Shown piece by piece: positions 22,101 to 64,000 of a stretch of 64,000 nucleotides of DNA. The translations under genes and the position numbers were made by a program. The DNA is taken from positions 28,272,001 to 28,336,000 of the forward strand of contig NC_135250.1 of the NCBI RefSeq assembly GCF_964204865.1, in the 5' to 3' direction. The notes beneath the pieces are model-generated. The model made no database searches, had not been told where the DNA came from, and saw only the letters and a program-made list of their open reading frames with translations. The first letter of the stretch is position 1. Every line of letters starts with the position of its first letter. Origin of the DNA: Styela clava (taxonomy: Eukaryota).

Positions 22101-24356
22101 ATGAACTATTACCTCAACTTCCTGACGGATGCTACATCACTTGATTTTGCTGCTTTCAGAAAGCCGGGTGGCTTAGGAGTAAGTTGAAATGCACAATCTT
22201 TGAATTACGTTGTGATGATCAAATTAAACACGTTAATTTTTCATATACAATCGGTATTTATATATTTTTAAACAAGGCAGACGTGACACGAAGAACATAC
22301 AAATAAAGATTGAAAATGCTTTCAAAAGCGTTAATAGGAAATAATCGTTTTGAAAAATCTTTGCACAAAAATGTAGGAAATATAGAAGCATGTTTAAATA
22401 GAATCTGCTTTACAAGCAACCCCCACTTCGTAAAATCCTAATTTTGGACAGAAAAAATGTTTCTGGTTCGTTAATGCCTATCCAATATACTACAACATAC
22501 GGGTAGAGTGGGATAAACTTTTTTACCAGATTCATATATTTAATTCCGTCATGTAAAATTAATATGCGTTGTGAAAATAATAAAAAAACAAATACAAGTA
22601 TAAAAAATTATGCGGGATCATTGCAGCTGATAAAATCAATGTAACTAACTTTTTTACTAATTTATTTCAGTCATTTAATAATCCTGTTGGATACAGTCAC
22701 TACATATCGAATACAAGACTAACAACAAGTGTTGGAAGAAGATATCTCAAACATGACGTACTATATCTCTCTGTACAAGTTACCGGTATGTATAAAAGAA
22801 CTATGGTATAAAATATGGGCAATTTTATTAATTGGACTGAGGGTGGCCAAGGTTTTTAAACCTGGGGTCAAAATATTTGCCGATATAGACTGGCGGGCAA
22901 TGTAAGAGTGACGTAAAGTTCACATTTTATTACCAATATTTATTTTGTTACAAAAGTAAAACTTAAAAACAATATGTTCCGCGCCAAGACTGAATTTAAT
23001 CGCAATCCCTGCAAATTCCATGAGCTATTTCTGGCTAGGGGCCGACGAGCGGGAGTTTGCTTGCGCCAGGACAAGAAAATGGACTTGATGACGTCATTAT
23101 TTATGACGTAAATTTAGTTATGTATATTTTATATATATTGTAAGATTACTATTCTTTTTACATTTATGATGGATTTTTTTTATTAACTATCCCTGACTTG
23201 GAATAAATGTATAGTAAATATCATAATGTATCGTATAAATAACAAGTAAGCCCATGAGGCAATATCATATAAGGGAGTATTTTTTCTATATTCCATTCAT
23301 ATCAAAAAGTACACTATAACCCTTATCCTTATTTTTTACAGATATGCGTCCATTTGAAAATGGAAGCAACGAGATTTCGGCTCAACTTCGTAATCCCGTT
23401 ATCAGAAACGCCCGTGACCTTCAACCTCTCCTGACCCCGGAAGTCTACGAAACTTCCGATCAGGAACCCATGGAGAAGGAATCGGACGCAGAAAATTTCA
23501 TGGAAGAAACCAACAACAACAACAACAACGATGGAATGATCACAGTCAAAACCACTGTTATCATTGTTGTAACATTATCGTCCATGATATTCTTATTCAT
23601 GGCTTTCCTCATTTGCGCCGTGGCGTCCTCCAATAGCAATAAAATGAAACAGGTTCCGACTGTTCAAAATAATATCAGGTAAATTGTTTTTGAAAAATAA
23701 ATATGATTAGGACATTGTTTTTAAATAATCTTATTTTCAAAAAAAAATATCAGGAATTTTAAAATTTTTGAAATAATATCGAATAACACATTTGCTGACC
23801 TTTGGAAATTTCTTGAATTAGATAGATCAATTGGTCTTATTCACGAAATTTTCTAATGACAGAAAGAATTTAAACTGTTGACCTATATGCGCTAAAACTG
23901 CTCTCTCCCAAAATTGCTTTTGCCATCCGTTGTACACAACTGTTTGTGAGATGCAACACTACATGCAAAGAACATTTTCACTATTTTTTTTCCAAATACA
24001 ATATTTATGTGAAATTTACCACCTAATATATGTGTTTCTGATTACATTTGGGGTTCGCAAATGGTTGATCGGCCTTTGCATGAAATTACGTCTTTTTCAC
24101 TTTAAAGCAGTGGTTCTCAAAGGAGACTTGAAAATTTTTAAAAAGGGGCGCGGTTTAAAAAGTTTGAGAACAACCGCTTTAGAGTAAGTTTACGTGACCC
24201 TGGTATGGGCAAGATTTCTTGAAAATGCAATTTAATCGAGTTGACCGTCATTATAATACCGACAGTATTAAACTAAATATTTTTATGTTTATTTTCAGTC
24301 ATGAAGCAAGATACGTGATCAATCATTCTTATGGATACGGAGATGAAGAAATATAA
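13127..24356 (+). CDS. Meprin-like astacin metalloprotease, copy B (type I membrane protein, 756 aa)
   Basis: 16 exons: 13127-13168, 13684-13759, 14369-14440, 15072-15217, 16033-16142, 16781-16956, 17523-17625, 18052-18167, 18505-18681, 19988-20135, 20415-20584, 21215-21393, 21933-22178, 22671-22785, 23342-23678, 24299-24356. All GT-AG, 2271 nt with no internal stop. Signal MRFIILLLLTFIIGANC; LLEGDI; R|NTIL; [19 protein letters not shown]; SVMHY; MAM; MATH (YMAIYFRLVGGKYDNELEWPF); TM VIIVVTLSSMIFLFMAFLICAVA. Intron phases match copy A over the 12 shared exons. Confidence 0.94.
16385..16612. repeat. Dispersed repeat fragment plus a short relative of the hairpin MITE
   Basis: Shares the AACCG(G/C)ACGAGA motif with about 6453 and 18850; 16548-16613 has GGCGCTCC...GGAGTACC ends and the ACCCTAACCTGGTACACA core seen at 24972 and 41697. 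Confidence 0.5.
24108..24176. mobile_element. Minimal 69-bp hAT MITE
   Basis: TIR CAGTGGTTCTCAAA / TTTGAGAACAACCG; TSD CTTTAAAG/CTTTAGAG. Similar solo ends (AAAAGTTTGAGAACCC) at about 1556 and about 29737. Confidence 0.7.
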
Positions 24357-44079: not shown

Positions 44080-45767
44080 AAAACTTAAAAACATTTGATA
44101 CGAACTATAGTAAGCACTCTAACAATAACTTCGAAAAACACTATATGGTGGATTTACAATATACTTCTTAAAGACGACGATTAACTTTAAGCTAAGGTCA
44201 ATAGTGATTATAAGTACATCATGAACGAATGATTTATTGCAGAAAACCATTCCCACTGTTGTATCTACAAATTACCGCTAGATGCTATTTAAGATGTCAT
44301 TTTCATCCACTTTGCGTTGAGGGAATTCCTGAAGGACGCCCTTCGAATGGTGGAGGTGGTCTTGCTAGCATGTCTATCGCTGCATAAACTCTAACAATCT
44401 TTTTCATATATATATTGTGCGTGCTTTCTTTATTTTATGGACGGTAAATAAACACTATGCCACTGTGCCCGAATCGCACAGGAGTTCAATCAATTTTCTA
44501 TGATTTGACGATATTAAGATATTCTGTTTTTTTTTCTTTTTTTTTAAATTCAATTTTCTTAATGGTATAAGAGGCAGGCAAAAAGTTTTAAATGTAACAT
44601 AAAAAGTGCGAGATGTCGGGATGTGAGATTTTTTATTTTAAATATGCATACATTCTTTTTTCATACCAGATTAAATTTTGTGTGAATCATAATAAAAAAT
44701 AGAAAACTTATTTTTTGTATTAGTAGTTATACAGTTCAGATATCCCGTGGTCTATATTATTGGGGAAGGCAGTACTATCAGATACGAAGTGGAGTTGTTT
44801 ATCATTTGCTGGAATGTTTTTTTATTGGTATCAATATTTTCTTCTGTCTTTTCCTTATGGAACTGGCCCAAATTGCTTTCGAATAATCTATTCAGTTAGC
44901 TCATTTGTGCCCTATAATAATATGATACTGCCTCCACGTACACACAAAATATATGTTTATTTGAAACATGATAAAACGTAGTTTGCAGTTATTTTTTTCT
45001 TAAAACAACCAAGGAAAGAGCTGCATGAAACAGGAGCAATAATCGCATGCCACTCGCTAACCGCGGGTTGGCCAGCCATGTTCTAGAGTTATCGGGTTGT
45101 GATAATGTAGCGAGTTTTTTTGTATGTGTATGCTTATCGGGTTCAGGTAATCTGGACCTTGTTTCGGCCATACTTAAAACAAAAATGTGTTGAGAACTTC
45201 ATCTATAATTAAACTAAGGAATCTTTAGTTTATTAATTTTACGAGAAATGAAACAATATCACCTGCTTAAGCGAATGATTCTCCTCTACATTGTAAAATG
45301 TTTAAAAGATCTAACATACGAAGAGGAAAAATAACTTGTAAATTGAATATTTAAAACAATCTAATAAAATCTAGTTTTCTGATTTGCTTAGAATTGTGAA
45401 AATGGCCTTTTGATGCCTGCTCATCGAATATTTTAATTTCGTTATAACGTTTCAAAGCGGATGGAGACGGGGCCCGATTCGAAGAATATGATAGTAGTGT
45501 TGTTTTACCCAACTATTACATAATTACACGTAGTTGCAATATTTATTTTGGACACGATTCATCCATAATCCAATCCATTCTTCTTCTTATCGTTACAGAG
45601 CATCGGAGGAAATAGTTGGCAAAAACAGAATAATTAGCCACCGATTACATTCACGTTTTTATCGGTATTCATTTCATTGAAAATGTAAAGTAATATATGT
45701 AATTAATAAATTTTGCATAAAGGTAGTATTATATACATTAGATATATTTAACCTGGCAGATAACAGT

Positions 45768-46115
45768 GACGCATTCATATATTCAAAATAAATCTTTTAG
45801 TGTAAAATGTCAACCTATTAACATTAGTTAAATTTTGGGCACCACATAATGAAACTACCATTGATTCATTGTTTGTATACGCATTTCATTGGTCAAATTA
45901 GGCCATGCATATATTATTGAAAGGTCACAATATTTGTAGTAATATTACCTCTGGCTTCAATGTGGTGCAAATGAAAACACACATAGGCATTTAGTTCAAT
46001 GAACACTCTGACGCATCCTGTCGCTTAATAGTTCTGATAGGTACGATAAAAAGACATTTGTGCATTGTGTTCTACTTTGTCAGTACAGCATTGGAGGCAT
46101 CACGCTACAAACAAA
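45768..46115 (+). promoter_or_regulatory. Conserved upstream (promoter/5'UTR) block of L4
   Basis: Lies directly before the L4 ATG; close homologs at 52732-53060 (before L5) and gene-less copies at about 51255-51600 and 62051-62400. Regulatory function is inferred from position only. Confidence 0.5.
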
Positions 46116-46152
46116 AGATTTAGGTTGTACTTTCAGGCCAGAAAGAGTAAAA

Positions 46153-49100
46153 ATGGAAACAACCTTCTTTCTTTTTGTATTATTTCTATTCAATTGGAAA
46201 TGTTTGGGTGAGTTACAAGATGAAATTAGCATATTTGTATGACAATTATTTGGGTCGGTGTTGAAGCGTGAAAGCGACGTCATATAACGAAGTACACGCA
46301 ATCGTTTTTGCAATCGTTGAGTAATTGAATCAAAATCTATATTATATTTTATGAAATTAGGTAATAGATCTTTTTTTCGCATTAGGATAATTGCGCTATA
46401 CGTTATTATATTATATTATACGTTATTGTCTGGTGGTTAACGAGTCTGCTGCAGATTGTATATTAAATAGTTCATACAAATGACATCTTATATGGGGAAG
46501 ATATGAACTTAAAGATATCATATTGAATTTTCAAGTAGCTAGTACAATCTATAGGTGATAAAATTGTTGACGTTTTAGAGTGTACTCATAAAATTACTTT
46601 TTGTTGACAAATTATTACTATAGTTACAGCCGCAACCAATTCAGATGAGTCATGCGATGGGCATAGTGCAGCGTTTGAAATTGTGGTAAATACTTATATT
46701 TAATTTGCTAAACTAAAACAAACTAACTTCAAATATTAAAAATTGGAAACACAGAAAACTACAAAAAATGAATTAAAAACTCTAGAACATAGATGTCCAA
46801 CCTGCGGCCCGCGGGAGCAAAGTTGTTGAAAGCATTTAAAGAGAGTTTCGATTAATTGCAAAATTCGACGGTCTCTTTAAAATTTTGTATGCCTCCCGTT
46901 GACATTCGGGTAGAAGAGGCCCCAGAATATACGCAAAGAAGATAGAAAACTTATACTCTACAGTGAGTGTATCAATAATAATGAGACAAATGGTAATGCG
47001 TATTGCAGCGGCAATGGAAACAACGTATATGTGCAAATCTTTCTTTTCGAAATTGAAAGTTATGAAATCGGAGCATAGGAGTAAGCTGTCGAACGACAAC
47101 TTGACAAGCTAGTTAGTTACGTTGTGAGGTACCAAAGCCCAAAGCTAGCCGTTAATATTGGACAGTTGAGCAATAACATTCAAAAGCAAGTTTTGCACTA
47201 GTTGAAAAAAAAAAGAATTGCTGACTTCGTGTTGTCCGGGTGCAAGTTGTGAAAGGGTGAAATCCGCAAAAGAATCCAGGCGTTTGATTTAGCGACGCTC
47301 AAATTCTAACGTAAATCGGCACTGGGCTGGTATTCTAGTTGGGTAAAAACGTTTGTGCTCCTGAAGTATCCGTATAAAGATGGCGCACAACCTGAACATA
47401 GTATGTGTACCAGGTTATAGTTCAGGTTGTGCGTCATCTTCGTATAAAAATACTTCCGGAGCGCCAAAACGTTTGCGGCCCGCAATGAATTTCTTCATGT
47501 GAAAGTGGCCCGCGACACTAACAAGGTTGGACATGCCTGCTCTAGACAATTAAAATTACTTGAATATTACAATATATAAATATTTACAGCTGCTCTATCC
47601 GAACATAACTTCGTACTGGCAAATTGGCTAATGTAATATGTTTTAGGTACTTCAACGATTTATCATCATTAAATATTTAAAAACTTTTATTTTCAGTCTG
47701 AAAGTGAACATGGTGAGATTTGACTCTATGATAAATGCTCAATAAACCGCTCAAAGATAAATAAAACAGTGAAAAATTTTGATATTTAGCTCGGTATGGT
47801 ACTTTCCTATTTTTTTTTCATTACAATTCACACACACTTCAACATAAAGTATTTAAAACTAACATTTATTTATTTGGAGGATTGTAAATTGAGTCAATGA
47901 GAGATATGTATAAAGTGATCACCAAATCAGGAGTTGTAAGCTGTTAATACAATGTGATCTTGAATTTAATTTGTTGTCTGTCACCTTAGCTTTATCTCTG
48001 CTAAAATAAATATGAAGAAGTTCTAATTCTATTTCTTATTCTCGCACTTACTTCTTTGAAAATTTAAAAATCTAAATCACTATTACTGTGTTTTCAGATT
48101 TGAAAAGGCAACTGGAGGAAAAGTTCACGTCACTTTTGAGGAAGTATCCAAACTTGTTTCAAAGTGAAGTCAACATTCAAGCAACATTAAGAAACCCACA
48201 TGCGACAAAGACATCTTTCACAACATTACCAAATTTTTCAACAAATGCTTCATTCAATGCGACAAACAAACGACCCTGCCAATCTACCGCAAATACTCAC
48301 TCTATTAAACCTTTAACTGAAGCCTACAACAAAACAACCTCCAGTGTTACGACTTTCCCTATAACAACTAGAAACTTTATCTCCACTGCTGCATCAACTA
48401 TGGAAACACTAACTGATTCAACCGAAACCACAGTTATTCTCACAACTTTACCAGGTTAGCTATTCTATGCATTGTGTTTGTTATGTAACTCACCTTTGCA
48501 GGCTGAAGTTGTATGTAATATGCACCATGCCTTTGCTCTATATGAGATTTGTGTTTACAGAAACTAATGCGATTTAAAAAAAAAACTTCTTCTTTCGTTT
48601 GGCAGACAGTATTAAATTGTATTTCCTCATATTTGATTTAAGATATATGTGGAGCCATATACAACAACACTTGCTACATTGCGATCCTTAGGCTTGGAGA
48701 CTTCCAAAAGGCTGTGGAGTTATGCCAAGCTGAAAATTGGACTATGGCAAACATCTACAGTGCTGATCACTATGACATGATTGTCAACTACATACGACAA
48801 ACAATTTTGCCTTTTTGGAATATGGAGTATATTTACTTGTGGACAGGAATGGAATATAAAGTAAGTGAACTTTTTTTACTTTGTGATAGAATTTACTCGA
48901 TATAAAAACAGGAGGAGAAAATCCGTTTTGGGTATTTGTATTGACTAAATATTGAATCAAAAATGTTAATTTATGCAATGGGAAATTATATTCTATTTGA
49001 AACTTGTTAAATGCGATAAACTAAAAATAAGCTAGTCAAGGTGTACTAATTTAAAGCCTAATAACTTTGTTCCATTACGACTATTCGTATCATGCGTAAT

Positions 49101-49604: not shown

Positions 49605-50369
49605 AAGGTTTATTCTACATTCCACAAACTGCTAAGAGCTCATGTGTTAACACAACAATCCGTTTTGATATACTGTCTATGCATATTTAATGCTGCATTT
49701 TAACTCAAATGTATTTCTGTGAGATTGTCAGACTTCTTCAGACAATTAGACTTCAAAAATGACAAGAAATTCACAATCCTGTAGTTTAAATGTAGAGATA
49801 AATAAACTTGAAATTAAAATCTTAAAGAGATTGTATACAATTTGGATATAATATTGTTAACAACCACATGATAAAGACAAACCTCTAAATCTTTAAAGGC
49901 ATTCATATTTAATTTTTTAGTATGCATATCTTATATTATTCGGTACTTTTAGTTTAGTTTCTGTTGGTGGAATCGTCTAAAAATGATTGTACTTATGTCG
50001 ACGAGCATACGTAGTGAGATTTGAGGATTCCAGTTATGAATCCAAAGTATTATTCAAATGCAATAAATATATTTTTTGAATTTATAAAATTTCTAATGTT
50101 AATTTTTACTTTTTATGGTTGCTTCAGATAAACTTTTAATTTAAATGATGTATGTGAACTTGCATGAAATCGAACACTCTTAAATTATTAATTTTTGTTA
50201 AAAAGTCGGAGCGCAAATAAATTTCATCGAAACGTTCTGTACTTGGAATTGTAACTTATATAAACTTAAGATATGGTTGTAATGATTTTACAGAAATAAT
50301 AAACGTAAAAATATTAACAAATGTTAATGAAAAACGACTAATTACTGAGAGAATAATTTTACGGTAATT

Positions 50370-52400
50370 TGGAGCTTTTAGGGCTTAACAAACTTAATCT
50401 TAGCAACCAATCAGAAAACACATTTGTCTCAAATAAAACTATTAATACTATGAATTCTGACTGTGCCCATGCTCATTATATGTTTTGATCTAGAAATCAA
50501 ATGACCCACATAGCTCTGAACACCGACAAAAAATTCGAAAATTCCAACTACTGAATGCTGAATTTTATAACGAATTATTTGTAATAATAAAAAAGTATTG
50601 CTTCAAAAAGTATTGCTAAAAACATTTTAAAAGTTAATGGTATTTTTTACTGCTATTAGTTTCACTCTTTTCTTCTTTTGTTTTTAATTGCACTTTCTAC
50701 CATTTTGTTCAAATAGCTTTTCAGTTATTTCCTATACGTATTCTATGTATGTAAAGCAAAACTTAAATGAAGACTCGTTTCAATTTTGAAATTCAACCTG
50801 TCATTATGTGGCGTTTGGTGAATTTATGTTTGAGTTTTCTATTTGTAGCTAATGAGGTTTAGGTAATTTGGACATTGCCTCCATCATACTTGTACAGAAT
50901 TGTGTTGAGTGCATCATTTAAATTTGGTCATTAAAAATATTAGGTTATTGATTTAATGGGGAACTTAACTATACCAATGTTACTGCTTAGGCAAATAGTT
51001 CCTCCACATTGTATACATTTTAAAAGATGTAATAAACGGAGGGAAAAATAAAGTGCAATATTAAAAATTAAATATTCGAGGAAAATTAAGTTTACTGTAA
51101 TTACTGTAATAAAGAAAATAACCTTGTAATGACTGCTCATTGAATATTTCGATTTTGATATTCAACTAATGGTAACAGGACCCGAATCAAAGTTCTGATA
51201 AATATAGTAATACAATTACTCTGGATATTGTTAACCAAACTGGTAACATTTAAAGCATTCCTATATTTAAAATAAATGTTTTTAGTGTCAAATGTCAACC
51301 GGTTGACTTCGGAAACATTAAACGTTGTGCACCACTTGAGGAAATTACTATTGATGCACTGATTGCATACAAATTTTCTTGATCAGGTTAGGCCATGCAT
51401 TTACTAATAAAAGTTCACTATATTTATCTTAAAATTATCCCCGGCTTTAATGTGACAAATGAAACCACTCACATAGGCATTTAGTTCGAAGAATCCTTTG
51501 ACTCATCTTGTCGCCTAATAGTTCTGATAGGTATGATAAAAAGTCATTTGTGCATTGGTTTCTACTTTGTCAGTACATCCTGGGACATCACGCAGCGAAC
51601 GAGAAGTGTATAGCGTTTTTTACATTTGTTTTGTGACAAATTGATCGTACCTATAAGATTGTAGGATTAACAAACAGACTCACACTTCAAGCAAGTATTC
51701 AAAAACAACTTTGTTTCAAATAAATATACCAACATCATCAACTCTGTTTGTGCACGTGGTTTTTATGTTCCTTTGAGATTATACTGTTTTGACTTAGAAA
51801 TTGAATGGCTGTCATGTCTTTGAACACTGAAATAAAAGTCAAAAATTCAAATTATTGACTGCTAAATTTTACAACAAATTATTCGTAATAATGAAAAATT
51901 ATTGCTTATTTTTTTCACAAGGTAATAATATTTTTACTGCTATCATTTTTACTCTTTTCATCTTTTGTTTAGAATTGCACTTTCTACACTTCTGTTTACA
52001 TGTCTATTCAAATATTTCCTTTGTTCTATATTTGAAAAACAAATATATTCCTAAATCAAGACTCGTTTGACTTTTAGAATTCAACATTGGTGTAACAGTT
52101 GTGGTGACATTTTAATAGGTCCTGGAGTACGGTTTTTTTTATGTTTAGGGTGCTAGCATATATTGATCTGTGTTGAGAGAATAATAAAATACACAGTTTT
52201 TTGCATGAGTCTACCTGAGTCTCGTCTCAGCATGCAACAAAAGGTATAAGAAGTTATAATGTAGCGTTTGGTAATTTTGAGTTTTCTATTTGTAAGCTAA
52301 TGAGGTTTAGGTAAACTGGACATTGCTTCTATCATACTTGTACAAAAATCTGTTGAGTGCATCATTTAAATTTGGTCATGAAAATTATTAGGTTATTAAT
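50370..52400 (+). repeat. Local segmental duplications of L4/L5 intergenic DNA
   Basis: Blocks such as GAGTTTTCTATTTGTA(A)GCTAATGAGG...TGGACATT recur at about 50830, 52280 and 61695; TTTTGA(T)C(T)TAGAAAT recurs at about 50484, 51787 and 62565. Confidence 0.75.
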
Positions 52401-53097
52401 TTCATGAGAAAAAAAACTCGAAGCGGATGGAAACAAAGCCCGATTCAATGGTTTTTGTAGCGGTATAGTTTTATCCAGCTATTACATAATTACACGTAAA
52501 TGCAACATTTCATTTGCATATTATTCATCCATAATCCAATCCATTCTTCTTCTAATCGTTACAGACAATCGGAGGAAAAAGTTTGCAAAAACAGGATAAT
52601 TAGCCACCGATTACATTCACGATTTTATCGATATTCATTTCATTGAAAATGTAAAGTAATAGATGTAATTAATTAATTTTGCATAAATGTAGTATTATAT
52701 ACATAAGATATATTTAACCTGGCAGATAACAGTGACGCATTCATATATTCAAAATAAAATCTTTTAGTGTAAAATGTCAACCTATTAACATTAGTTAAAT
52801 TTTGGGCACCACATAATGAAACTACCATTGATTCATTGCTTGTATACGCATTCCATAGGTCAAATTAGGCCATATATGTACTATTAAAAGTCACAATATT
52901 CGTAGTAATATTATCCCTGGCTTTAATGCGGTGCAAATGATAACACACACATAGGCATTTAGTTCGATGAAAACTCTGACGTATCCAGTCGCTTAATGGG
53001 CATTTGTGCATTGGGTTCTACTTATTCAGTACAGCATTAGGGCATCACGCTACAAACGACATATTTAGGCCGTATTTTTAAGCCAGGAATAGTAGAA

Positions 53098-56000
53098 ATG
53101 GGTACAACCTTCACCATTTTTGTACTGTTTCTATTTCATTGGACATATTTGGGTGAGTTACAAAATTATAATTTGAACCGCTAATGAAATTAGCATATTT
53201 GCATGAAAATTATCTTTCAAGTTTTAAAATGTAGGCAAGATCCAATTGAATGCCAATTTTGAGTTGATCAAAATTCCGGATATTAATATAAATCCAATGT
53301 CTGTTAGTTATGTTATTATTGGTTCCTCTTGTTATCGTGGCAATTTGAATGGCGAACAGCTAAAAGGAAGGTGTTTATAAACAAAATAGCCATGTTCATA
53401 TTAGAAGCTGTTTATCGAAAACTTTGTGCGGAGTTGAGGCGTGGAAAACATCATGTAACCGAATACAAATAATCGTTTTTAGGATTGAGTAATTTAATTA
53501 AAACATATATTTTATTTTATAACATTTTAGGTATTAATTTTTGTTGGCACCATCGTCTTAAGGTTAATGTGCTGCAGATTTTATATTAAATATATTTTTT
53601 GTTTAAATGAAATTAAATCGTATGTGGCGAAAGAATGCACTTAAAGATATAATATTGAATTTCTAGTTGCTACTACAATCAATACGTAATAAAATTGTTT
53701 ACGTTATATAGTGTACTTATAAAACTACTTTTCGTTGACAAATTATTACTGTATTCACAGCCGCAAACCAGTTGGATGAGTCATGTGACGGGCAAAGTGC
53801 AGAGTTCGAAATTGTGGTGAATACTTATATTTAATTTATTTAACATCAAAATTGGAGCAATAAACTAAAACAAACTAAGTTCAAATATAGAAGAGTGAAA
53901 TAAAATTCGTTACACACAGAAAACTATAAAAAATGAATTAAAACCTCTAGAGTCTAGACAAATAAAATTGCTTGGTTATTACAATATATAAGAATTTAGA
54001 GCTGGTCTCTCCGAACATAACTTCCTTCAGGCGATTTGGCTAATGTTCTATGTTTTAGGTACTTCAAAGATTCATCAACATTAAATATTAAAAACCTTTT
54101 ATTTTCAGTTTAAAAGCGAACATGGTGAGATATTCTATTATAACTAATGTTTTCTGCTCAAAGATATATAAAACATTAAAAAAACTGTGATAATCATCTC
54201 GGTATGGTACTTTTCTGATTTTATTTTTTATTTCAGTCCACCCATAAACAACCACAACATAATTTATTTTAAAACTAACATTTATACAATTGGAGAATTT
54301 AAAATTGAGACAATGAAAGATATGTATAAAGTGTTTGATAAGTGTAAGGAACACACTTGTTGTAGCACCGCTGGTTAACATATGTAGCGGGATTTAATGG
54401 TGTTTGTGTGTTTGATAATTGTTAAAATATGTCTTCCTTATATCTACGTACATATTATAATACAGTGAATGATAAACATAACTATCCAGGCCTGAGCATT
54501 TAAATCTTAGTAACTATTCCCTTACAAAATCAGGAGTTGTAATCTGTGGATATTATGCGATAATGAATTTAATTTGTTGTCTGTCATTTTAGCTTAACCT
54601 CTGCTAAAATAAATTTGAAGAATTTCCAATTGTATTTCTTATTATCGCACGTTTTCTTTAGAAATTTAAAATTTGAACATATAAATTAGAATATTTGTGT
54701 TTTCAGATTTGAGAAGGCAACTGGAAAAAAATCCACGTCACTTTTGGCGAAGCATCCGGACTTGTTAAAAAGTGAAGTCAACATACAAGCAACATTAAAA
54801 AAAAAACATGCGACAAAGAAATCTGTCAAAACATTTCCAAAATTTTCAACAAACACTATATTCGAAGCGACAACCAAGCGCCCCCGTCAATCCACTACAA
54901 ATACTCACCTTACTAAACCTCCAACTAAAACCTACAACAAAACAACCACTCATCCATTCAAAGCGACTTACAACAAATCAACCTCCGCTCCATTCAAAGT
55001 GACCTACAACAAAACAACCTCTGCTCCATTAGAAGCGAACTACAATAAAACAACCACTGCTTCATTCAAAGCGACTTACAACAAAACAACCTCTGCTCCA
55101 TTCAAAGCGACCTACAACAAAACAACCTCTGCTCCATTCAAAGCGACTTACAACAAATCAACCTCCGCTCCATTCAAAGCGACTTACAACAAAACAACCT
55201 CTGCTCCATTAGAAGCGAACTACAATAAAACAACCACTGCTTCATTCAAAGCGACTTACAACAAAACAACCTCTGCCCCATTCAAAGCGACCTACAACAA
55301 AACAACCTCTGCTCCATTCAAAGCGACTTACAACAAATCAACCTCCGCTCCATTCAAAGCGACTTACAACAAAACAACCTCTGCTCCATTAGAAGCGAAC
55401 TACAATAAAACAACCACTGCTTCATTCAAAGCGACTTACAACAAAACAACCTCTGCTCCATTCAAAGCGACCTACAACAAAACAACCTTGCTCCATTCAA
55501 AGCGACTTACAACAAATCAACCTCCGCTCCATTCAAAGCGACTTACAACAAAACAACCTCTGCTCCATTAGAAGCGAACTACAATAAAACAACCTCTGCT
55601 CCATTCAAAGCGACTTACAACAAAACAACCTCTGCTCCATTAGAAGCGATCAACAATAAATCAACCTCCGCTCCATTCAAAGCGACTTACAACAAAACAA
55701 CCTCTGCTCCATTAGAAGCAAACTATAATAAATCAACCTCCGCTCCATTCAAAGCGACTTACAACAAAACAACCTCTGCTCCATTCAAAGCGACCTACAA
55801 CAAAACAACCTCTGCTCCATTCAAAGCGACTTACAACAAATCAACCTCCGCTCCATTCAAAGCGACTTACAACAAAACAACCTCTGCTCCATTAGAAGCG
55901 ACTTATAACAAAACAACCTCTGTTCCATTCAAAGCGTCCTACAACAAAACAACCTCTGCTCCATTCAAAGCGTCCTACAACAAAACAACCTCTGCTCCAT

Positions 56001-59000
56001 TAGAAGCGAACTACAATAAAACAACCACTGCTTCATTCAAAGCGACTTACAACAAAACAACCTCTGCTCCATTCAAAGCGACCTACAACAAAACAACCTC
56101 TGCTCCATTAGAAGCGAACTACAATAAAACAACCACTGCTTCATTCAAAGCGACTTACAACAAAACAACCTCTGCTCCATTCAAAGCGACCTACAACAAA
56201 ACAACCTCTGCTCCATTAGAAGCGAACTACAATAAAACAACCACTGCTTCATTCAAAGCGACCTACAACAAAACAACCTCTGCTCCATTCAAAGCGACCT
56301 ACAACAAAACAACCTCTGCTCCATTAGAAGCGAACTACAATAAAACAACCACTGCTTCATTCAAAGCGACTTACAACAAAACAACCACTGCTTCATTCAA
56401 AGCGACTTACAACAAAACAACCTCTGCTCCATTCAAAGCGACCTACAACAAAACAACCTCGGCTCCATTAGAAGCGAACTACAATAAAACAACCACTGCT
56501 TCATTCAAAGCGACTTACAACAAAACAACTCTGCTCCATTCAAAGCGACCTACAACAAAACAACCTCTGCTCCATTAGAAGCGAACTACAATAAAACAAC
56601 CACTGCTTCATTCAAAGCGACTTACAACGAAACAACCTCTGCTCCATTCAAAGCGACCTACAACAAAACAACCTCTGCTCCATTAGAAGCGAACTACAAT
56701 AAAACAACCACTGCTTCATTCAAAGCGACTTACAACAAAACAACCTCTGCTCCATTCAAAGCGACCTACAACAAAACAACCTCTGCTCCATTAGAAGCGA
56801 ACTACAATAAAACAACCACTCATCCATTCAAAGCGACGTACAATAAATCAACCTCTGCTCCATTCAAAGCGACTTACAACAAAACAACCTCTGCTCCATT
56901 AGAAGCGATCTACAATAAATCAACCTCCGCTCCATTCAAAGCGACTTACAACAAAACAACCTCTGCTCCATTCAAAGCGACCTACAACAAATCAACCTCC
57001 GCTCCATTCAAAGCGACTTACAACAAAACAACCTCTGCTCCATTCAAAGCGACCTACAACAAAACAACCTCTGCTCCATTAGAAGCGACTTATAACAAAA
57101 CAACCTCTGTTCCATTCAAAGCGACCTACAACAAAACAACCTCTGCTCCATTCAAAGCGACTTACAACAAAACAACCTCTGCTCCATTAGAAGCGAACTA
57201 CAATAAAACAACCACTGCTTCATTCAAAGCGACTTACAACAAAACAACCTCTGCTCCATTCAAAGCGACCTACAACAAAACAACCTCTGCTCCATTAGAA
57301 GCGAACTACAATAAAACAACCACTGCTTCATTCAAAGCGACTTACAACAAAACAACCTCTGCTCCATTCAAAGCGACCTACAACAAAACAACCTCTGCTC
57401 CATTAGAAGCGAACTACAATAAAACAACCACTGCTTCATTCAAAGCGACCTACAACAAAACAACCTCTGCTCCATTAGAAGCGAACTACAATAAAACAAC
57501 CACTGCTTCATTCAAAGCGACTTACAACAAAACAACCTCTGCTCCATTCAAAGCGACCTACAACAAAACAACCTCTGCTCCATTAGAAGCGAACTACAAT
57601 AAAACAACCACTGCTTCATTCAAAGCGACTTACAACAAAACAACCACTGCTTCATTCAAAGCGACTTACAACAAAACAACCTCTGCTCCATTCAAAGCGA
57701 CCTACAACAAAACAACCTCGGCTCCATTAGAAGCGAACTACAATAAAACAACCACTGCTTCATTCAAAGCGACTTACAACAAAACAACTCTGCTCCATTC
57801 AAAGCGACCTACAACAAAACAACCTCTTCTCCATTAGAAGCGAACTACAATAAAACAACCACTGCTTCATTCAAAGCGACTTACAACGAAACAACCTCTG
57901 CTCCATTCAAAGCGACCTACAACAAAACAACCTCTGCTCCATTAGAAGCGAACTACAATAAAACAACCACTGCTTCATTCAAAGCGACTTACAACAAAAC
58001 AACCTCTGCTCCATTCAAAGCGACCTACAACAAAACAACCTCTGCTCCATTAGAAGCGAACTACAATAAAACAACCACTGCTTCATTCAAAGCGACTTAC
58101 AACAAAACAACCTCTGCTCCCTTTAAAGCGACCTACAACAAAACAACCTCTGCTCCATTCAAAGCGACTTACAACAAAACAACCTCAGCTCCATTAGAAG
58201 CGAACTACAATAAAACAACCACTGCTTCATTCAAAGCGACTTACAACAAAACAACCTCTGCTCCCTTTAAAGCGACCTACAACAAAACAACCTCTGCTCC
58301 ATTAGAAGCGAACTACAATAAAACAACCACTGCTTCATTCAAAGCGACTTACAACAAAACAACCTCTGCTCCCTTTAAAGCGACCTACAACAAAACAACC
58401 TCTGCTCCATTAGAAGCGAACTACAATAAAACAACCACTGCTTCATTCAAAGCGACTTACAACAAAACAACCTCTGCTCCCTTTAAAGCGACTTACAACA
58501 AAACAACCTCTGCTCCATTAGAAGCGAACTACAATAAAACAACCACTGCTTCATTCAAAGCGACTTACAACAAAACAACCTCTGCTCCATTCAAAGCGAC
58601 CTACAACAAAACAACCTCTGCTCCATTAGAAGCGAACTACAATAAAACAACCACTGCTTCATTCAAAGCGACTTACAACAAAACAACCTCTGCTCCCTTT
58701 AAAGCGACCTACAACAAAACAACCTCTGCTCCATTCAAAGCGACTTACAACAAAACAACCTCTGCTCCATTAGAAGCGAACTACAATAAAACAACCACTG
58801 CTTCATTCAAAGCGACTTACAACAAAACAACCTCTGCTCCCTTTAAAGCGACCTACAACAAAACAACCTCTGCTCCATTCAAAGCGACTTACAACAAAAC
58901 AACCTCTGCTCCATTAGAAGCGAACTACAATAAAACAACCACTGCTTCATTCAAAGCGACTTACAACAAAACAACCTCTGCTCCATTCAAAGCGACCTAC

Positions 59001-60813
59001 AACAAAACAACCTCTGCTCCATTAGAAGCGAACTACAATAAAACAACCACTGCTTCATTCAAAGCGACTTACAACAAAACAACCTCTGCTCCCTTTAAAG
59101 CGACCTACAACAAAACAACCACTGCTCCATTCAAAGCGGCATACAACAAAACAACCTATGCTCTATTCAAAGCGACCTTAAACAAATCAACCTCCGCTCC
59201 ATTCAAAGCGAACTACAACAAAACAACCCCCGCCCCATTCAAAGCGAACTATAACAAATCAACCTCCGCTCCATTCAAAGCGACTTACAACAAATCAACC
59301 ACCGCTCCATTCAAAGCGACCTACAACCAAACAACCATTGCCACATTCAAAGCGACCTACAACCAAACAACCTCTGCTCCATTCAAAGCGACCTACAACA
59401 AAACAATCTCTGCTCCATTCAAATCGACCTACAACAAAACAACCTCTGCTCCATTCAAAGCGACAACCAAGCTACCCCGTCAATCCACTGCAAATACTCA
59501 CTCTACTAAACCTTCAACTAAAGCCTACAACGAAACAACCTCTGGCGTTATGACTTTCCCTATAACAACTGGATATATTATTGACACGACCACTGCATCC
59601 ATGGGAACATCGACTATGGAAACATAACCAGATTCAACCGAAACCACAGTTAACCTTACAACTTTATCAGGTTAGCAATGTCATTCATTGTGCTTGTTTT
59701 AAATCTCACCTTTGCAGGCTGAAGTTGTATGTAATATGTACCACGCCTTTGCTCTATATGAGATTCGTTTTTACAGATAATAATCAGATTTAAAACAAAA
59801 ACTTGGTCTTCTTCGTTTGGCAGACCGTACCTAAATGTATTTCATCATATTTTATTTAAGATGAATGTGAAGTCATATACAACAACACATGCTACAGTGC
59901 GATCGTTAAACTCGGAGACTTTCAAAAGGCCGTGGAGTTATGTCAAGTTGAAAATTGGACTATGGCAAACATCTACAGTGCTGATCACTACGACATGATT
60001 GTCAGTTACATACGACAAACAATTTTGTCTCCTCAGAAAATGGACTATATTTATTTGTGGACAGGAATGAAATATGAGGCAAGAGAATATTCTACTACGT
60101 GATTTATTTAAGTTTTTTAAAATTGGATGAGAAAATCCATTTTGGGTATTTGTATTGATCAAATATTGAATCGAAAATGTTATCAATGCAATGGAAAATT
60201 ATATTCTATTTAAAAATTGTTAAAATGCATGGAACTAACAATTTAGCTAATTGAACTAATTCAAACTATGTTTCATTACGAGTATTCGTATCATGTGTCA
60301 TATACACGCAATTGGATATATTGCAAAAAAAATTTGACTAATTGCCATAAATAAAAATTGACGCAAATAATATAGCAGTTAGCGCATTATGCCCATATTA
60401 GTATTATTTAAAATTATGTAATTGAAGCGTAATCGACTCCACCCAGATAGTAATTATTTTTCCAATCTATTTTATTTGTCATATAAATGGTATTTCCAAA
60501 ATATTCCAAAACAGTCAATTTCTCGTATAAATTATTGTTTCTCTTGATTTTATTGGATATATGTGAAAAATCACATGATGAGTTTCAAAATCTCCCCTTT
60601 TCATTGTTTTTACAGGACAATCAGGTGTTTCTTGATTCTCGCGAGACAATTTCGATACCTGCTGTACTATGGTACCCTGGTTTTCCCCGAGACACTGATT
60701 TAAGGTTACACATAGTTATCCGCGTTGAATCAGATTCATCCTCGACTACACAAGGACTTATGAACTATGAAGCTTCTCAATCGTGGTACGGGTCTCTGTG
60801 TGCAATGTCTTGA
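53098..60813 (+). pseudogene. L5: recent duplicate of L4 with a hugely expanded, disrupted stalk exon (pseudogene, null allele, or gene rescued by exon skipping)
   Basis: Exons 53098-53152, 53761-53816, 54109-54124, 54707-59670, 59861-60078 (GC donor), 60616-60813. Exons 1-3, 5 and 6 are open and the same length as in L4. Exon 4 has a -1 shift in an A7 run (54725-54731), single-base deletions at about 55488, 56530 and 57789, and an in-frame TAA at 59625-59627. Confidence 0.75.
54933..59465 (+). repeat. Coding-type minisatellite, 126 x 36 bp, unit FKATYNKTTSAP (variants LEANYNKTTTAS etc.)
   Basis: First TACAACAAA at 54933, last at 59430: 4497 nt plus 3 deleted bases = 125 x 36. Lies inside exon 4 of L5; higher-order periods of 3, 4, 5 and about 33-35 units are visible. 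Confidence 0.97.
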
Positions 60814-63016
60814 AAGGATTATTCTACATTCCACAGACTGCAAAAAGCTCTTGTGCAACTCACAACATTCTATTTCGATATACTGTTTAAACATATATAA
60901 TTATAGACTGCTGCATACTAACACTAAGGTATTTCTGTTAAGTTGTCTGACTTTCTCAAACAAGTAGATTTAAAAAATGATAAGAAGCGAACAATCTTGT
61001 ACTTTAAATATGGATTTAAAATAAAATTTCTGAAATTAAAATCTCAAAGTGATAGTATACATATATAATAGTGTTAATATCAACCACATGATTGAGATAA
61101 ATCTGTATCTTTAGCGGTATTGACCTATTTAGTTTGAATATCTTGTGGTATCCTGTACTCTTAGTTTAGTATACGCTGTGGTTGGAACCACCTAAAAACT
61201 GTTGTACATATGCTGATGAACATCCTTCGTATTAAGACTTTCAATATAAGGATTCCAAATACGAATTCAAAGTATTTTTTGCAATTACCATAATTTTTTA
61301 ATAATTTTAAACTTTTCATCTTTTGTTTAGAATTGCACTTTCTACACTATGGTTTACATAACTTTTCGATCGTTTCCTTTATGTGTTCTATATTTGTAAA
61401 CCAAATATAAACTTAAATCAAGTCTCGTTTCAATTTTAGAATTAAACATTGGTGTAAAAGTTGTGGGTATTTTTAAAAAGTCGTGGAGTACCTAATTCAG
61501 TTTGATCTTTAAGACTTTTTAAGTCATTTTTCGACAACGTTTTTTTAAATTTTACGTGCAAGGTGCTGCAATTGTCTGTGTTAAGATGAATTTATTAAAA
61601 GATACAGATTTTGCGCGAGTCTACCTGCGTACCGTCTCAACATGCTTTTATAGGTATGAGATGTGATAAAGTAGAGTTTGGTAAGATTATGTTTGAGTTT
61701 TCTATTTGTAAGCTAATGAGGTTTTGGTAATTTGGACATTTCTCTGATCATACTTGTACAAACTGTGTTCTGTGCAAAATTGAAATTTGGTTATGAAAAT
61801 TATTAGGTTATCAATTTCACGAGAAACGTAACTATATCCATGTTCCTGCTTAGTCAAATAGTTCCTTCATATTGTATAAATTTTCAAAAGATGTAATAAA
61901 CGGAGAGAAAAATAAAGTGCAGTATTAAAAATTGAATATTCAAAAGAACTCGGTTTTTCATTCGTTGGCTAATTTCTGATTTATTTGAAATGGTGAAAAT
62001 AGCCTCCTGGTGATGACTGCTCATCGAATCATCAATCTAACGGGTAAAATTGACGCATTCACATATTCAGAATAAATGCTTTTAGTGTCAAATGTCAACC
62101 TGTTATCTTCGGAAACATTAAATTTTGTGCACCACATGAGGAAATTACTATTCATGCATTGATTGCATACACATTTTCTTGATCACGTTAGGCCATGCAT
62201 TTACTATTAAAAGTTAACAATATTTATCGTAATATTATCCCTGGCTTTAATGTGGAACAAATAAAACCACACACATAGGCATTTAGTTCAAAGAACTCTC
62301 TGACGCATTCTGTCGCTTAATAATTCTAATAGGTATGAAAAAAGGGTTCTTTGGTACATACTTTGTCAATACAGCATTGCGAAATCACGCTGCAAACGAC
62401 AAACATAGACCGATTTTCACAAATGTTTTTAGACAAATTGACCGTACTTTAAAGATTGTAGGGTTAACAAACAGACTTAATCTTTAAGCAAACATTCAAA
62501 AACACCTTTGTTCAGATAGGTATATCAACACCATGAATTCTGACTGTGCCTTGAGATTATACTGTTTTGACTTAGAAATCAAATGGCCACCATAGTTATG
62601 AACACTCCAACTATTTACTGCTAAATTTTAGAACAGATTATCTGTAATAATGAAAAAGTATTGCCTTCTTTTTTTTAATTGAAAGGTAGTGGTATTTTTA
62701 CTGTTATCATTTTTACTCTTTGCTTCTTTTGTTATTAACTGCCCTTTTTACACTTTTGTTTACATAGATTTTCCATTATTTCCTTGTAAAACAAATTAAA
62801 TCAACTTAATAAACTTAATAATCCTAAATCAAGAATGCCTCAATTGTGAAGTTAATCATTGATAAATTGTTGTGATTACCCTTTTAATAAGTCGTGGGGT
62901 AACTAATTCAGTTTTTTCGTCAAGGAAAGATAAATTTTTGACATTGTTTTTTTCAAGTTTTACCTGTAGGGTGCCAGCACATATTGGTTCATGTTTGGAT
63001 GAATTCAATACACATT

Positions 63017-63633
63017 TTACACATGTTGTTGCATCGCGCTTGATTGCTTTTCAACATCAGGCGGCACACTGGATGAAGCCAATATTAGATAATGTTCTAA
63101 GTACGCATCCCTCATCCGAGTTCCCAGATTGTTCTTAGTAAAATTCATTTTCGAATATAATTGTTCGGTACTTCCAAACATCGATGTGACATTTCGCATC
63201 AATGGTAAAATTTGGATAGAGATTTCCTTCAAGAAGATACAAAAATCAGGCAATGATATATTTCTAGAATAAAATATAGATTATATTTCCTCCTTGCATT
63301 GCATCTCAAGAAACTCTATTCCAATCTTTTTTGGGCCATCAAAACCTATGCACTCATCATTAACTTTTTTGCGTGTTGCTATTTCTGTAGTTATAATTAA
63401 TTTTTAGGCTCGTTAAACGAGTAGCTAGCTGTTCACTAAATTGTTAGATTATAATATAATTTAATCTACACATCCACAATCTTACGATTACTTCTGTTAC
63501 GTAAAGAATATAATCAATTTCTCGAGCGTGGAATATTAAATTAATTCATCGTCAAAACCGTCGTTTTGTCGCTGTAAATCAGTGAAGCGTTGCGGATTAC
63601 GTTATCCCGCGGGCCGTAGGTTGCCGACCTCTG
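63017..63633 (-). mobile_element. Decayed hAT (Charlie/GTF2IRD2-like) element with a transposase C-terminal remnant
   Basis: Minus-strand ORF 63017-63253 contains MFGSTEQLYSKMNFTKNNLGTRMRDAYLEHYLILASSSVPPDVEK, the hAT dimerisation motif; terminus AGGTTGCCGACCTCTG ends at 63633 and is followed by CTCTAGAG; 63385-63633 aligns with about 385-579. Confidence 0.82.
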
Positions 63634-64000
63634 CTCTAGAGGTATAGGTTGCGATAATGTAGCATTTGGTAAATTGATGTTTGAGTTTAATATGTGTAGG
63701 CTCATTGGGTTTAGGGAATCCGAACCTTTTTCAATCATACTTCAATAATACAAAAATATGTTCGGTACTGCATTCAAATTTAGTTATGGAAATCTTTAGT
63801 TTATTAATTTCATGAGAAATGAAATAACGGGGAAAAAAATTAAGTGCACTATCAGAAATTGAATATTTAAAATAATCTAGTTTTTTATTAATTGACTACA
63901 TTCTGATTCATTTGTGATGGAGAAAATAGCCTTGTAATAATTCGTTTTGATATTACGTTTTGATATCGTATGGAAACATGACCCGATTCAAATATTCTGG

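What the first reader, a model, noticed from the sequence alone, without database searches (positions are those of the whole stretch)
54933..59465. A 126-unit N-glycan bottlebrush repeat: one N-x-S/T sequon every 12 residues
Seen: essentially every unit has a sequon (NKT, NKS, NET, NQT, nearly always preceded by Tyr) plus several Thr/Ser and periodic Phe/Tyr/Lys, and unit variants keep the sequon. In frame this would be about 1500 aa, against a stalk exon of about 119 aa in sister gene L4. Established: classical mucin PTS repeats are O-glycan scaffolds and rarely carry an N-sequon in every unit. Inference: a recently evolved mucin-like polymer with N- plus O-glycans, tipped with a lectin fold.
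Basis: partly seen in the sequence, partly recalled or inferred. Interest (0 to 1): 0.75.

Follow-up and report, generated by a model that had tools for sequence, protein, structure and literature searches.

The report
Broken sequon-repeat array in lectin-like gene
A very young 126-copy repeat sits inside one exon of a secreted lectin-like gene of the sea squirt Styela clava and would carry one N-glycan site per 12 residues, but in the assembled copy its reading frame is broken several times, so a glycan "bottlebrush" protein remains only a possibility for other copies of the gene.

Summary
The array is real. It has 126 head-to-tail 36-nt units at 54930-59464. All 126 units carry N-x-S/T when each is read in its local T-Y-N-K-T-T-S-A-P-F-K-A frame. 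It lies in exon 4 of L5, the fifth gene of a tandem cluster of secreted C-type-lectin-like genes in Styela clava.

It is not one 1500-aa reading frame in this assembly:
- One base is missing from an A-run near the exon start, which gives a stop at 54766-54768, before the array.
- Three units are 35 nt long.
- A TAA follows the array.
- The exon is 4964 nt, which leaves 2 mod 3.

Reads confirm the TAA and show it is polymorphic: other haplotypes have TCA. An RNA-type run splices the two lectin exons and holds the terminal array units.

Variants among units show no synonymous bias, but none destroys a sequon (0 of 38, p about 0.008). No related repeat exists elsewhere in the genome or among 1.84 billion protein representatives.

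Verdict: a young, locus-private coding minisatellite in a transcribed gene whose assembled allele is a null. The bottlebrush reading is open only for other alleles.

An earlier first-reader note on this same stretch (s1-809967) had already listed the lesions.

The parts
53098..53152 (+). L5 exon 1: ATG and signal-peptide-like start (MGTTFTIFVLFLFHWTYL), GTGAGT donor, phase 1
   Evidence: Homology to the N-terminus of Styela clava XP_039258422 (P0053/P0149) and to L4 at 46153
53761..53816 (+). L5 exon 2 (AANQLDESCDGQSAEFEIV), intact
   Evidence: tblastn of P0149 and reading of the splice sites
54109..54124 (+). L5 16-nt micro-exon 3 (FKSEH plus 1 base), which sets phase 1 for exon 4
   Evidence: Located by homology to the L6 micro-exon (FESKV plus G) that the annotated protein requires. 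The same micro-exon is present in L4
54707..59670 (+). L5 exon 4, the stalk exon holding the array: 4964 nt (2 mod 3), phase 1 at both ends
   Evidence: Alignment to the L4 stalk exon; length
54725..54731 (+). A7 run with one base fewer than the L4 homologue; shifts the frame entered from exon 3
   Evidence: alignment (gap at this run); translation. Not checked against reads
54766..54768 (+). First in-frame stop (TAA) of the assembled allele when read from the canonical ATG, 162 nt before the array
   Evidence: (frame 54700...RSIRTC*), with the phase
54861..54947 (+). Left copy of an 87-nt 'long unit' (FEATTKRPRQSTTNTHLTKPPTKTYNKTT)
   Evidence: 89.7% identical to the right copy. L4 has a single copy, 80.5% identical to this one
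54930..59464 (+). 36-nt x 126 tandem array. The dominant higher-order period is 108 nt (3 units); 180-nt and 144-nt blocks occur near the ends
55470..55504 (+). Unit 16, 35 nt (one C missing from the Ser codon)
   Evidence: Not checked against reads
56513..56547 (+). Unit 45, 35 nt (CC to C in the second Thr codon after the sequon)
57772..57806 (+). Unit 80, 35 nt, the same variant as unit 45
56264..56820 (+). 557-nt block repeated at 57523-58079 with at most 1 mismatch; it carries the unit-45/80 deletion together with three other rare unit variants
   Evidence: offset 1259; unit strings
59454..59540 (+). Right copy of the 87-nt long unit (FKATTKLPRQSTANTHSTKPSTKAYNETT)
59625..59627 (+). TAA stop after the array; polymorphic, 59626 A/C (TAA or TCA = Ser)
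   Evidence: The reference allele is in one X1 contig with 0 differences (depth 640). The C allele is in one X1 contig (460 of 1100 depth) and in 5 of 5 X9 reads. L4 has CTA here
59863..60078 (+). L5 exon 5, first half of the C-type-lectin-like domain; open, followed by a GC donor where L4 has GT
   Evidence: RNA-type contig X5 record 14 joins 60076/60614, with 3 letters fitting either side, which is the 60078|60616 junction
60616..60813 (+). L5 exon 6, second half of the domain plus the stop codon; open

Best explanation
The array is a very young, locus-private coding minisatellite in exon 4 of L5. L5 is the fifth gene of a tandem cluster of secreted C-type-lectin-like genes in Styela clava and a recent duplicate of L4.

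Origin (shown from the sequence): an 87-nt piece of the Ser/Thr-rich stalk, which already ended in Y-N-K-T-T, was duplicated. A 36-nt derivative, the long unit minus its inner 60 nt, then amplified to 126 copies by unequal exchange or slippage. This left 3-, 4- and 5-unit higher-order blocks and one 557-nt internal duplication. One sequon per unit is inherited from that seed.

State of the assembled allele: L5 is transcribed and spliced, and array sequence is present in RNA-type contigs. But this allele is a null. Read from its ATG it stops 20 codons into exon 4. The array frame is broken by two independent one-base deletions, one of them later copied by the 557-nt duplication. A derived, read-confirmed nonsense codon precedes the lectin exons. 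No glycan bottlebrush can be made from this allele.

Inferred, not shown: the array currently evolves as a neutral minisatellite in one non-functional haplotype of a highly redundant gene family.
For: - Array and sequons.
- Gene model by homology to the annotated neighbour L6, which is 99-100% identical per exon to XP_039258422.
- Lesions. Exon length 4964 = 2 mod 3.
- The unit-45 and unit-80 deletion lies in a 557-nt block duplicated with at most 1 mismatch, next to rare variants I, J and L. It is therefore one event that predates a duplication, not two random errors.
- The TAA is real and polymorphic.
- One search found no indel between assembly and reads over 59103-61400. X1 had depth in all 30 bins, X9 in 11 of 30.
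- The only indel variants among units are 1-nt deletions, 2 of 40 distinct variants. There is no excess of synonymous variants (12 of 38, p = 0.18), and the other two frames look the same.
- Long-unit origin.
- The repeat is found only at this locus: all 19 matches fall inside window 54930-59544.
- No protein with this repeat exists in the word search or among 1.84 billion representatives. The best identity on the array part was 46%, to unrelated low-complexity repeats.
- Redundancy: at least 150 scored paralogous exon-5 matches out of 516 candidates, 4 of the 150 with stops.
Against: - All four frame-breaking changes are 1-nt deletions, and one sits in a 7-A homopolymer. That is the usual shape of long-read assembly errors. 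I could not lay reads on them, because the one read-laying run went to the 3' side.
- Earlier unchecked notes report lone frameshifts in otherwise intact genes of this assembly.
- The other five exons of L5 are intact. dN/dS against L4 is 0.44.
- The nonsense codon is absent from at least two other haplotypes.
- 0 of 38 unit variants destroys a sequon, against about 4.6 expected (p = 0.008), and Thr to Ser is the only change seen at the third sequon position.
- Only the sequon frame is open in every unit type.
- RNA-type contigs cover unique terminal units at a depth (5.7) like that of the lectin exons (7.6).
Confidence: 0.58

Rival explanations
1. Functional bottlebrush allele. In other haplotypes, or in this one if the 1-nt deletions are assembly errors, exon 4 is an open frame of about 1650 codons. 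L5 would then be secreted as an extended stalk with about 126 N-glycans plus O-glycans, carrying a C-type-lectin-like head.
For: - TCA replaces TAA in 5 of 5 X9 reads and in one X1 contig.
- There is a spliced RNA contig, and array units are present in the RNA-type run.
- The signal peptide and exons 1-3, 5 and 6 are intact.
- dN/dS is 0.44.
- 0 of 38 unit variants kills a sequon (p = 0.008).
- The sequon frame alone is open in all unit types.
- The stalks of paralogs L1, L3 and L4 also carry sequons, 2 to 5 each, though L2 has none.
- 12-aa units with one sequon each exist in two annotated proteins from other animals.
Against: - The frame is broken at four places in the only full-length sequence available.
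- The unit-45/80 deletion was copied by a later duplication, so it is unlikely to be a random error.
- There is no synonymous bias.
- The low variability of the sequon core also covers three synonymous third positions (columns 12, 15, 18). Homogenisation rather than selection could explain it.
- No annotated or predicted protein anywhere holds the repeat.
- The array is younger than typical haplotype divergence: 0.2% between block copies against 1.72% heterozygosity (PMC7540406, passages). Other haplotypes may not have a large array at all.
Confidence: 0.3
2. Exon skipping. Exon 4 is symmetric (phase 1 to phase 1). Transcripts that skip it would encode a short, stalk-less secreted lectin-like protein, and the array would be effectively intronic, neutral DNA.
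For: - All lesions lie in exon 4, and the other five exons are intact.
- The phases are confirmed through the 16-nt micro-exon.
- Exons 5 and 6 are spliced in RNA.
Against: - RNA-type contigs hold unique terminal array units (59182-59282, 0 differences, depth 5.7) at about the depth of exon 5/6 (7.6). Introns 59671-59862 and 60079-60615 have depth 0. Exon 4 sequence is therefore at mature-RNA level.
- No exon 3 to exon 5 joint could be looked for, because the stretch laid did not reach exon 3.
- With two flank lesions in about 430 nt and none in 483 nt of other exons, the clustering of lesions is not significant.
Confidence: 0.1
3. Assembly artefact. The array length or its internal duplications were produced by the assembler from a much shorter repeat.
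For: The sequenced individual is heterozygous here (two alleles in X1), and heterozygous tandem arrays are hard to assemble.
Against: - The array has an ordered, non-random variant structure with graded, divergent terminal units.
- Word depth over the array's end in X1 is 100 or more times that of the flanks: 38340-66061 against about 360-590. That fits many copies.
- Terminal units occur in three independent runs.
Confidence: 0.02

Closest known systems
Mucin-type PTS/VNTR exons (for example the MUC1 60-nt VNTR; recalled, no call)
   Same: One very large exon is made of head-to-tail coding repeats rich in Thr, Ser and Pro (S+T 32.7%, Pro 6.3%). It is recent, has higher-order variant structure, and is expected to vary in length.
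   Different: Each unit carries an N-x-S/T sequon, is Lys-rich (14%) and holds aromatic residues. S+T content is lower than in classical PTS domains. The frame is broken in the allele at hand, and O-glycosylation is untested.
Osmia bicornis 'mucin-2-like' XP_029035888 (P0022) and Elysia crispata fibrinogen-domain protein KAK3727137 (P0003)
   Same: Both have 12-residue tandem units with exactly one sequon per unit (PPEVTTNGTTGA and EAIYNLTDTVSN; my visual count from the sequences is about 17 and about 24 units). They turned up as look-alikes. The design is therefore not unique to this locus.
   Different: They are not homologous: 46% and 39% identity over low-complexity sequence. The host proteins differ and the arrays are far shorter. 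Both are predictions without glycan data.
DC-SIGN / L-SIGN neck repeats (recalled, no call)
   Same: A C-terminal C-type lectin domain is held on a stalk of tandem repeats encoded by a single exon, and the copy number is polymorphic.
   Different: Those necks are 23-residue helical repeats that oligomerise a type II membrane receptor, with fewer than 10 copies. Here the protein has a signal peptide, and the units contain Pro and no heptad pattern. The likely form is an extended glycosylated rod, with 126 copies.
Frameshifted coding VNTRs such as the CEL exon 11 VNTR (PMC5352176 and PMC5844766; only the search listing and the start of each abstract were seen)
   Same: One-base deletions inside a coding VNTR throw the rest of the repeat into another frame.
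   Different: Those are disease alleles of an essential, otherwise conserved gene. Here the gene is one of at least 150 paralogs, and the allele carries several lesions.
Styela clava LOC120334969 (XP_039258422; L6, the next gene in the cluster)
   Same: It has the same six-exon plan, signal peptide, 16-nt micro-exon, Ser/Thr-rich stalk exon and two-exon lectin-like domain. It is 70% identical to the L5 post-array tail.
   Different: Its stalk exon is about 116 codons with no repeat, and at the seed position it reads KAYKQTNSS instead of YNKTT.

Membership tests
C-type lectin-like domain (Pfam PF00059 Lectin_C) | Match to the Pfam model at or above the gathering score (22.6 bits) | tested here: not met
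Tested exon by exon. L5 exon 5 gave no Lectin_C hit, and L4 exon 5 gave 13.6 bits, E = 0.12. The full-length paralog P0053 gave 18.1 bits, E = 0.0045.
C-type lectin-like domain (Pfam PF00059 Lectin_C) | CTLD fold | tested here: inconclusive
   For paralog P0053 residues 155-294, ESM Atlas features score 0.94 to Lectin_C clusters (28 of 30 hits in one family set), and the Atlas model aligns at TM 0.74 to a CD209-like cluster. PDB sequence search gave 0 hits at E up to 1. L5 exon 5 aligns to P0149 (the longer NCBI version of P0053) at E = 4e-7.
C-type lectin-like domain (Pfam PF00059 Lectin_C) | Ca2+/sugar-binding EPN or QPD motif plus WND motif (motifs recalled) | tested here: not met
   Read by eye in the L5 exon 6 translation. 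The aligned places read FPR and NYE. Carbohydrate binding is therefore not supported by sequence.
Mucin-like PTS tandem-repeat domain | Long tandem array of Pro/Thr/Ser-rich units in one exon of a secreted protein | tested here: met
   126 units; S+T 32.7%, Pro 6.3%. Signal-peptide-like exon 1.
Mucin-like PTS tandem-repeat domain | Array is an open reading frame continuous with the rest of the protein | tested here: not met
   Stop at 54766-54768 before the array, three 35-nt units, a TAA at 59625-59627, and an exon length of 2 mod 3. This holds for the assembled allele only.
Mucin-like PTS tandem-repeat domain | Dense glycosylation of the repeats | not testable with these tools
   Needs glycoproteomics.
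Coding minisatellite / VNTR | Unit of 10-100 nt in head-to-tail copies, with interspersed variant units and higher-order blocks | tested here: met
Coding minisatellite / VNTR | Copy number varies among individuals | not tested
Polymorphic pseudogene (null allele segregating with a possibly intact one) | A disabling change confirmed in reads, with a non-disabled allele at the same site in the population | tested here: met
   59626 A (TAA) is in one X1 contig with 0 differences. C (TCA) is in another X1 contig and in 5 of 5 X9 reads.
Polymorphic pseudogene (null allele segregating with a possibly intact one) | The other allele is open over the whole gene | not tested
   No full-length sequence of another haplotype was reachable. 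G000 holds no second copy.

The most novel reading that the evidence does not exclude
Some Styela clava haplotypes carry an open exon 4. L5 is then secreted as a protein of roughly 1700 residues whose stalk bears one N-glycan every 12 residues, more than 100 in a row, plus O-glycans, with a lectin-like head. That would be a mucin analogue built on N-glycans, born within the species' own polymorphism timescale and segregating alongside null alleles.
Probability: 0.3. Interest if true: 0.6.

Novelty: new member of a known kind. Interest (0 to 1): 0.3.

Why it matters
As it stands, this shows how a pre-existing glycosylation motif in a stalk exon can be amplified more than a hundredfold within a species. 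It also shows that such an array keeps rearranging after its frame is lost.

If an open allele exists, it would be a rare natural case of a polymer dominated by N-glycans. It would also offer a system where birth, expansion and loss of a mucin-like domain can be compared between haplotypes of one population.

For genome annotation, a striking periodic protein motif in a raw frame does not by itself mean that a protein is made.

Tried and rejected
- Pfam on single exons gave only sub-threshold Lectin_C. PDB sequence search of paralog P0053 gave nothing at E up to 1.
- The word-index protein search with the 611-aa open piece (57792-59624) scored 8000 candidates, none at E up to 0.001. That search only sees proteins of 336-1069 aa.
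- The exhaustive HMMER search gave 148 hits at E up to 0.001. All were low-complexity look-alikes of at most 46% identity, except P0053, which matches only the non-repeat tail.
- A repeat family or transposon origin is rejected. All 19 own-genome matches fall inside the array, and the minus strand has 93-105 stops per frame.
- I looked for an alternative acceptor or start that would enter the array frame directly. That frame is open only from 54690 and has no ATG. The 16-nt micro-exon fixes phase 1, so this idea is rejected.
- Literature searches found no paper on this gene, on Styela lectin stalk repeats, or on an N-sequon-per-unit animal mucin. I searched 'tandem repeat / N-glycosylation / mucin-like / C-type lectin / stalk', 'N-glycosylation site / each repeat / tandem repeats / mucin', and 'Styela / C-type lectin / tandem repeat'. 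Only listings and the starts of abstracts were seen. Supplements were closed and not consulted.
- PMC7540406 (passages) describes a 340-Mb, 210-scaffold PacBio RS II assembly. G000 has 376.8 Mb in 380 contigs and is therefore another assembly. I could not establish its sequencing technology.
- The spliced (joined) L5 model was never built or searched; exons were handled separately, and the dN/dS counts were summed per exon.


Full report
WHAT IS THERE

Tandem Repeats Finder reports a single array in 50000-64000. It spans 54930-59464, with period 36, 126.1 copies and 86% matches. My parse gives 126 units: 37 distinct at DNA level and 27 distinct as peptides.

Each unit, read in its local frame, is T-Y-N-K-T-T-S-A-P-F-K-A or a close variant.
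- 126 of 126 units hold N-x-S/T (NKT 109, NKS 13, NET 2, NQT 2).
- In 124 of 126 units Tyr precedes the Asn.
- S+T is 32.7%, Pro 6.3% and Lys 14.2%.

Three unit types make up most of the array: TYNKTTSAPFKA (33 units), TYNKTTSAPLEA (32) and NYNKTTTASFKA (27). They are arranged mainly as a 108-nt three-unit super-repeat, the best self-match offset at 87.5% identity. Five-unit blocks occur at the 5' end, four-unit blocks near the 3' end, and the last ten units are divergent.

The minus strand is closed, with 93-105 stops per frame. The repeat occurs nowhere else in the 377-Mb genome: all 19 matches fall inside window 54930-59544.

THE GENE AROUND IT

The window holds five tandem paralogs, L1 to L5, each with a Ser/Thr-rich stalk exon followed by two exons of a lectin-like domain. 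L4 and L5 are collinear at 76-84% DNA identity, introns included.

The exhaustive protein search returned one true relative, P0053. This is XP_039258422, an 'uncharacterized protein' of Styela clava. Its exons lie just beyond the window's end, at G000:C1:28338937-28341208, and match at 99-100%. The genome is therefore Styela clava, and that gene is L6 of the same cluster.

Mapping P0149 (the longer NCBI version of the same protein) on L6 and transferring by homology gives the L5 model:
- exon 1, 53098-53152: signal-peptide-like start
- exon 2, 53761-53816
- exon 3, 54109-54124: a 16-nt micro-exon
- exon 4, 54707-59670: the stalk exon with the array, phase 1 at both ends
- exon 5, 59863-60078
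- exon 6, 60616-60813

Support for a lectin fold is indirect.
- Pfam Lectin_C is below its cut-off, both exon by exon and for P0053, which scores 18.1 bits against 22.6.
- The ESM Atlas puts the C-terminal 140 residues of P0053 with Lectin_C clusters (features 0.94; structure TM 0.74 to a CD209-like cluster).
- The recalled EPN/QPD and WND sugar-binding motifs are not visible in L5 exon 6.
- The family is very large: at least 150 scored exon-5 matches out of 516 candidates, 4 of the 150 with stops.

THE FRAME IS BROKEN IN THE ASSEMBLED ALLELE

Relative to L4, one base is missing from the A-run 54725-54731. With phase 1 fixed by the micro-exon, the frame from the ATG reads D-L-R-R-Q-L-E-K-N-P... 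and stops at 54766-54768, which is 162 nt before the array.

Inside the array, units 16, 45 and 80 are 35 nt long. The sequon frame therefore passes through all three absolute frames. Wherever it leaves a frame, that frame meets a stop within a few units.

Units 45 and 80 carry the same deletion. Both lie in a 557-nt block (56264-56820 and 57523-58079) that is duplicated with at most one mismatch and also carries three other rare variants. The deletion is thus one event that a later duplication copied, which is hard to explain as random sequencing error.

After the array, TAA at 59625-59627 stands where L4 has CTA. The exon is 4964 nt, which is 2 mod 3. Exons 1, 2, 3, 5 and 6 are open, and dN/dS against L4 over exons 2, 5 and 6 is 0.44.

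- Run X5 is RNA-type. One of its contigs joins 60076/60614, with 3 letters fitting either side. That is the exon 5 to exon 6 junction and uses the GC donor that L5 has where L4 has GT.
- X5 also holds five short contigs on the terminal array units (59182-59459). One has 0 differences over 101 nt of unique units at depth 5.7. Exons 5 and 6 have depth 7.6, and both introns have depth 0.
- L5 is therefore transcribed, and exon 4 sequence sits at mature-RNA level. X5 has no contig on 59488-59933, and the tool warns that such holes prove nothing.
- The TAA is real: one X1 contig matches it with 0 differences at depth 640. It is also polymorphic: 59626 A>C (TCA, Ser) appears in another X1 contig (460 of 1100 depth) and in 5 of 5 X9 reads.
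- X9 differs from both X1 alleles at 59673, so at least three haplotypes were seen.
- L6 has Ser at this position, so TAA is probably the derived state.
- No indel between assembly and reads was reported in the 2.3 kb laid.

WHERE THE UNIT CAME FROM

An 87-nt 'long unit' flanks the array on both sides, at 54861-54947 and 59454-59540. The two copies are 89.7% identical, and L4 has one copy. The 36-nt unit equals the start of the long unit (F-K-A-T) joined to its end (Y-N-K-T-T), with the inner 60 nt missing. The sequon was already present in the seed (AYNKTT in L4). One sequon per unit is therefore a by-product of what was amplified.

IS THERE CODING CONSTRAINT?

Among 38 distinct substitution variants, 12 are synonymous in the sequon frame, against 26 of 108 possible changes (p = 0.18). 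The other two frames give 13 and 9 (p = 0.24 and 0.26), so there is no frame-specific bias.

However, 0 of 38 variants destroys a sequon, where about 4.6 would be expected (13 of 108 possible changes do so; p = 0.008). The only change at the Thr of the sequon is to Ser. This is suggestive, but it is a post-hoc test. The same 12-nt core is also invariant at three synonymous third positions (columns 12, 15, 18), so homogenisation could explain it. The two indel variants are both 1-nt deletions.

COMPARISON WITH WHAT IS KNOWN

No protein with this repeat exists in the word-index search or among 1.84 billion representatives. The array is therefore private to this locus and was not annotated as protein.

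The design itself is not unique. A bee 'mucin-2-like' protein has PPEVTTNGTTGA repeats (about 17 by my visual count), and a sea-slug fibrinogen-domain protein has EAIYNLTDTVSN repeats (about 24).

The closest kinds are mucin-type VNTR exons, lectin neck repeats of the DC-SIGN type (recalled), and frameshifted coding VNTRs such as CEL (listing only).

VERDICT

The best reading (0.58) is a very young coding minisatellite in a transcribed member of a huge lectin-like family, seen here in a null allele.

The bottlebrush protein remains possible for other haplotypes, or if the 1-nt deletions are assembly errors (0.30). Exon skipping (0.10) is not favoured by the RNA depths.

The sequencing technology of this assembly is unknown to me. 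The 2020 assembly described in PMC7540406 (passages) is a different one. Earlier scan notes mention lone frameshifts in other genes of this assembly. These are unchecked leads that keep the assembly-error rival alive.

Noticed in passing
window 54109-54124 (L5), about 47696-47711 (L4), L011:4403-4418 (L6): A conserved 16-nt micro-exon (four or five codons plus one base) lies between exon 2 and the stalk exon of these lectin-like genes. The annotated L6 protein requires it, and it sets the phase of the stalk exon.
   Followed up: yes
window 60079-60080: L5 has a GC donor after exon 5 where L4 has GT. An RNA-type contig shows that this GC-AG intron is spliced.
   Followed up: yes
G000:C1:28338937-28341208 (just past the window end; L009-L011): A sixth gene of the cluster, L6, is the annotated Styela clava LOC120334969 (XP_039258422). 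The two NCBI versions differ by a 36-residue N-terminal extension that falls in a dispersed repeat.
   Followed up: partly
window 45452-46249, 51198-51593, 52418-53213, 62045-62397: A dispersed repeat of 77-84% identity overlaps the 5' ends of L4 and L5. It contains the MVKSHLCIGFYFVSTAL-like open stretch used as a start in the newer NCBI model of L6.
   Followed up: no
window 744-968 (-) and 16752-16964 (+): An ORF resembling a MAM domain and an ORF with an astacin-type zinc motif (HEMMHAIGIWHE) lie upstream of the lectin cluster. Both domain names are recalled and were not tested.
   Followed up: no
window 23344-23682 (+): A 112-aa ORF has an acidic, Asn-rich head and one strong hydrophobic segment (VIIVVTLSSMIFLFMAFLICAVA), about 2.4 kb upstream of the L1 signal-peptide exon at 26118. 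Its relation to L1 is unknown.
   Followed up: no
P0003 (Elysia crispata KAK3727137) and P0022 (Osmia bicornis XP_029035888): These are two unrelated predicted proteins with 12-residue tandem units that each hold one N-x-T sequon. The Elysia repeat appears to have grown out of the WLGNE...LT segment inside a fibrinogen-related domain.
   Followed up: partly
window 59572-59734 and 60485-60516: At least three haplotypes were seen in public runs: the reference, the second X1 allele and X9. There are 7 or more single-base differences in about 1 kb. One of them, 59673 T>G, makes the exon 4 donor GTGAG.
   Followed up: partly
G000, many contigs (for example C18:16032066-16080960): The exon-5 type of this lectin-like domain has at least 150 scored copies in the genome. 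They include a run of near-identical copies spaced about 7 kb apart on C18.
   Followed up: no
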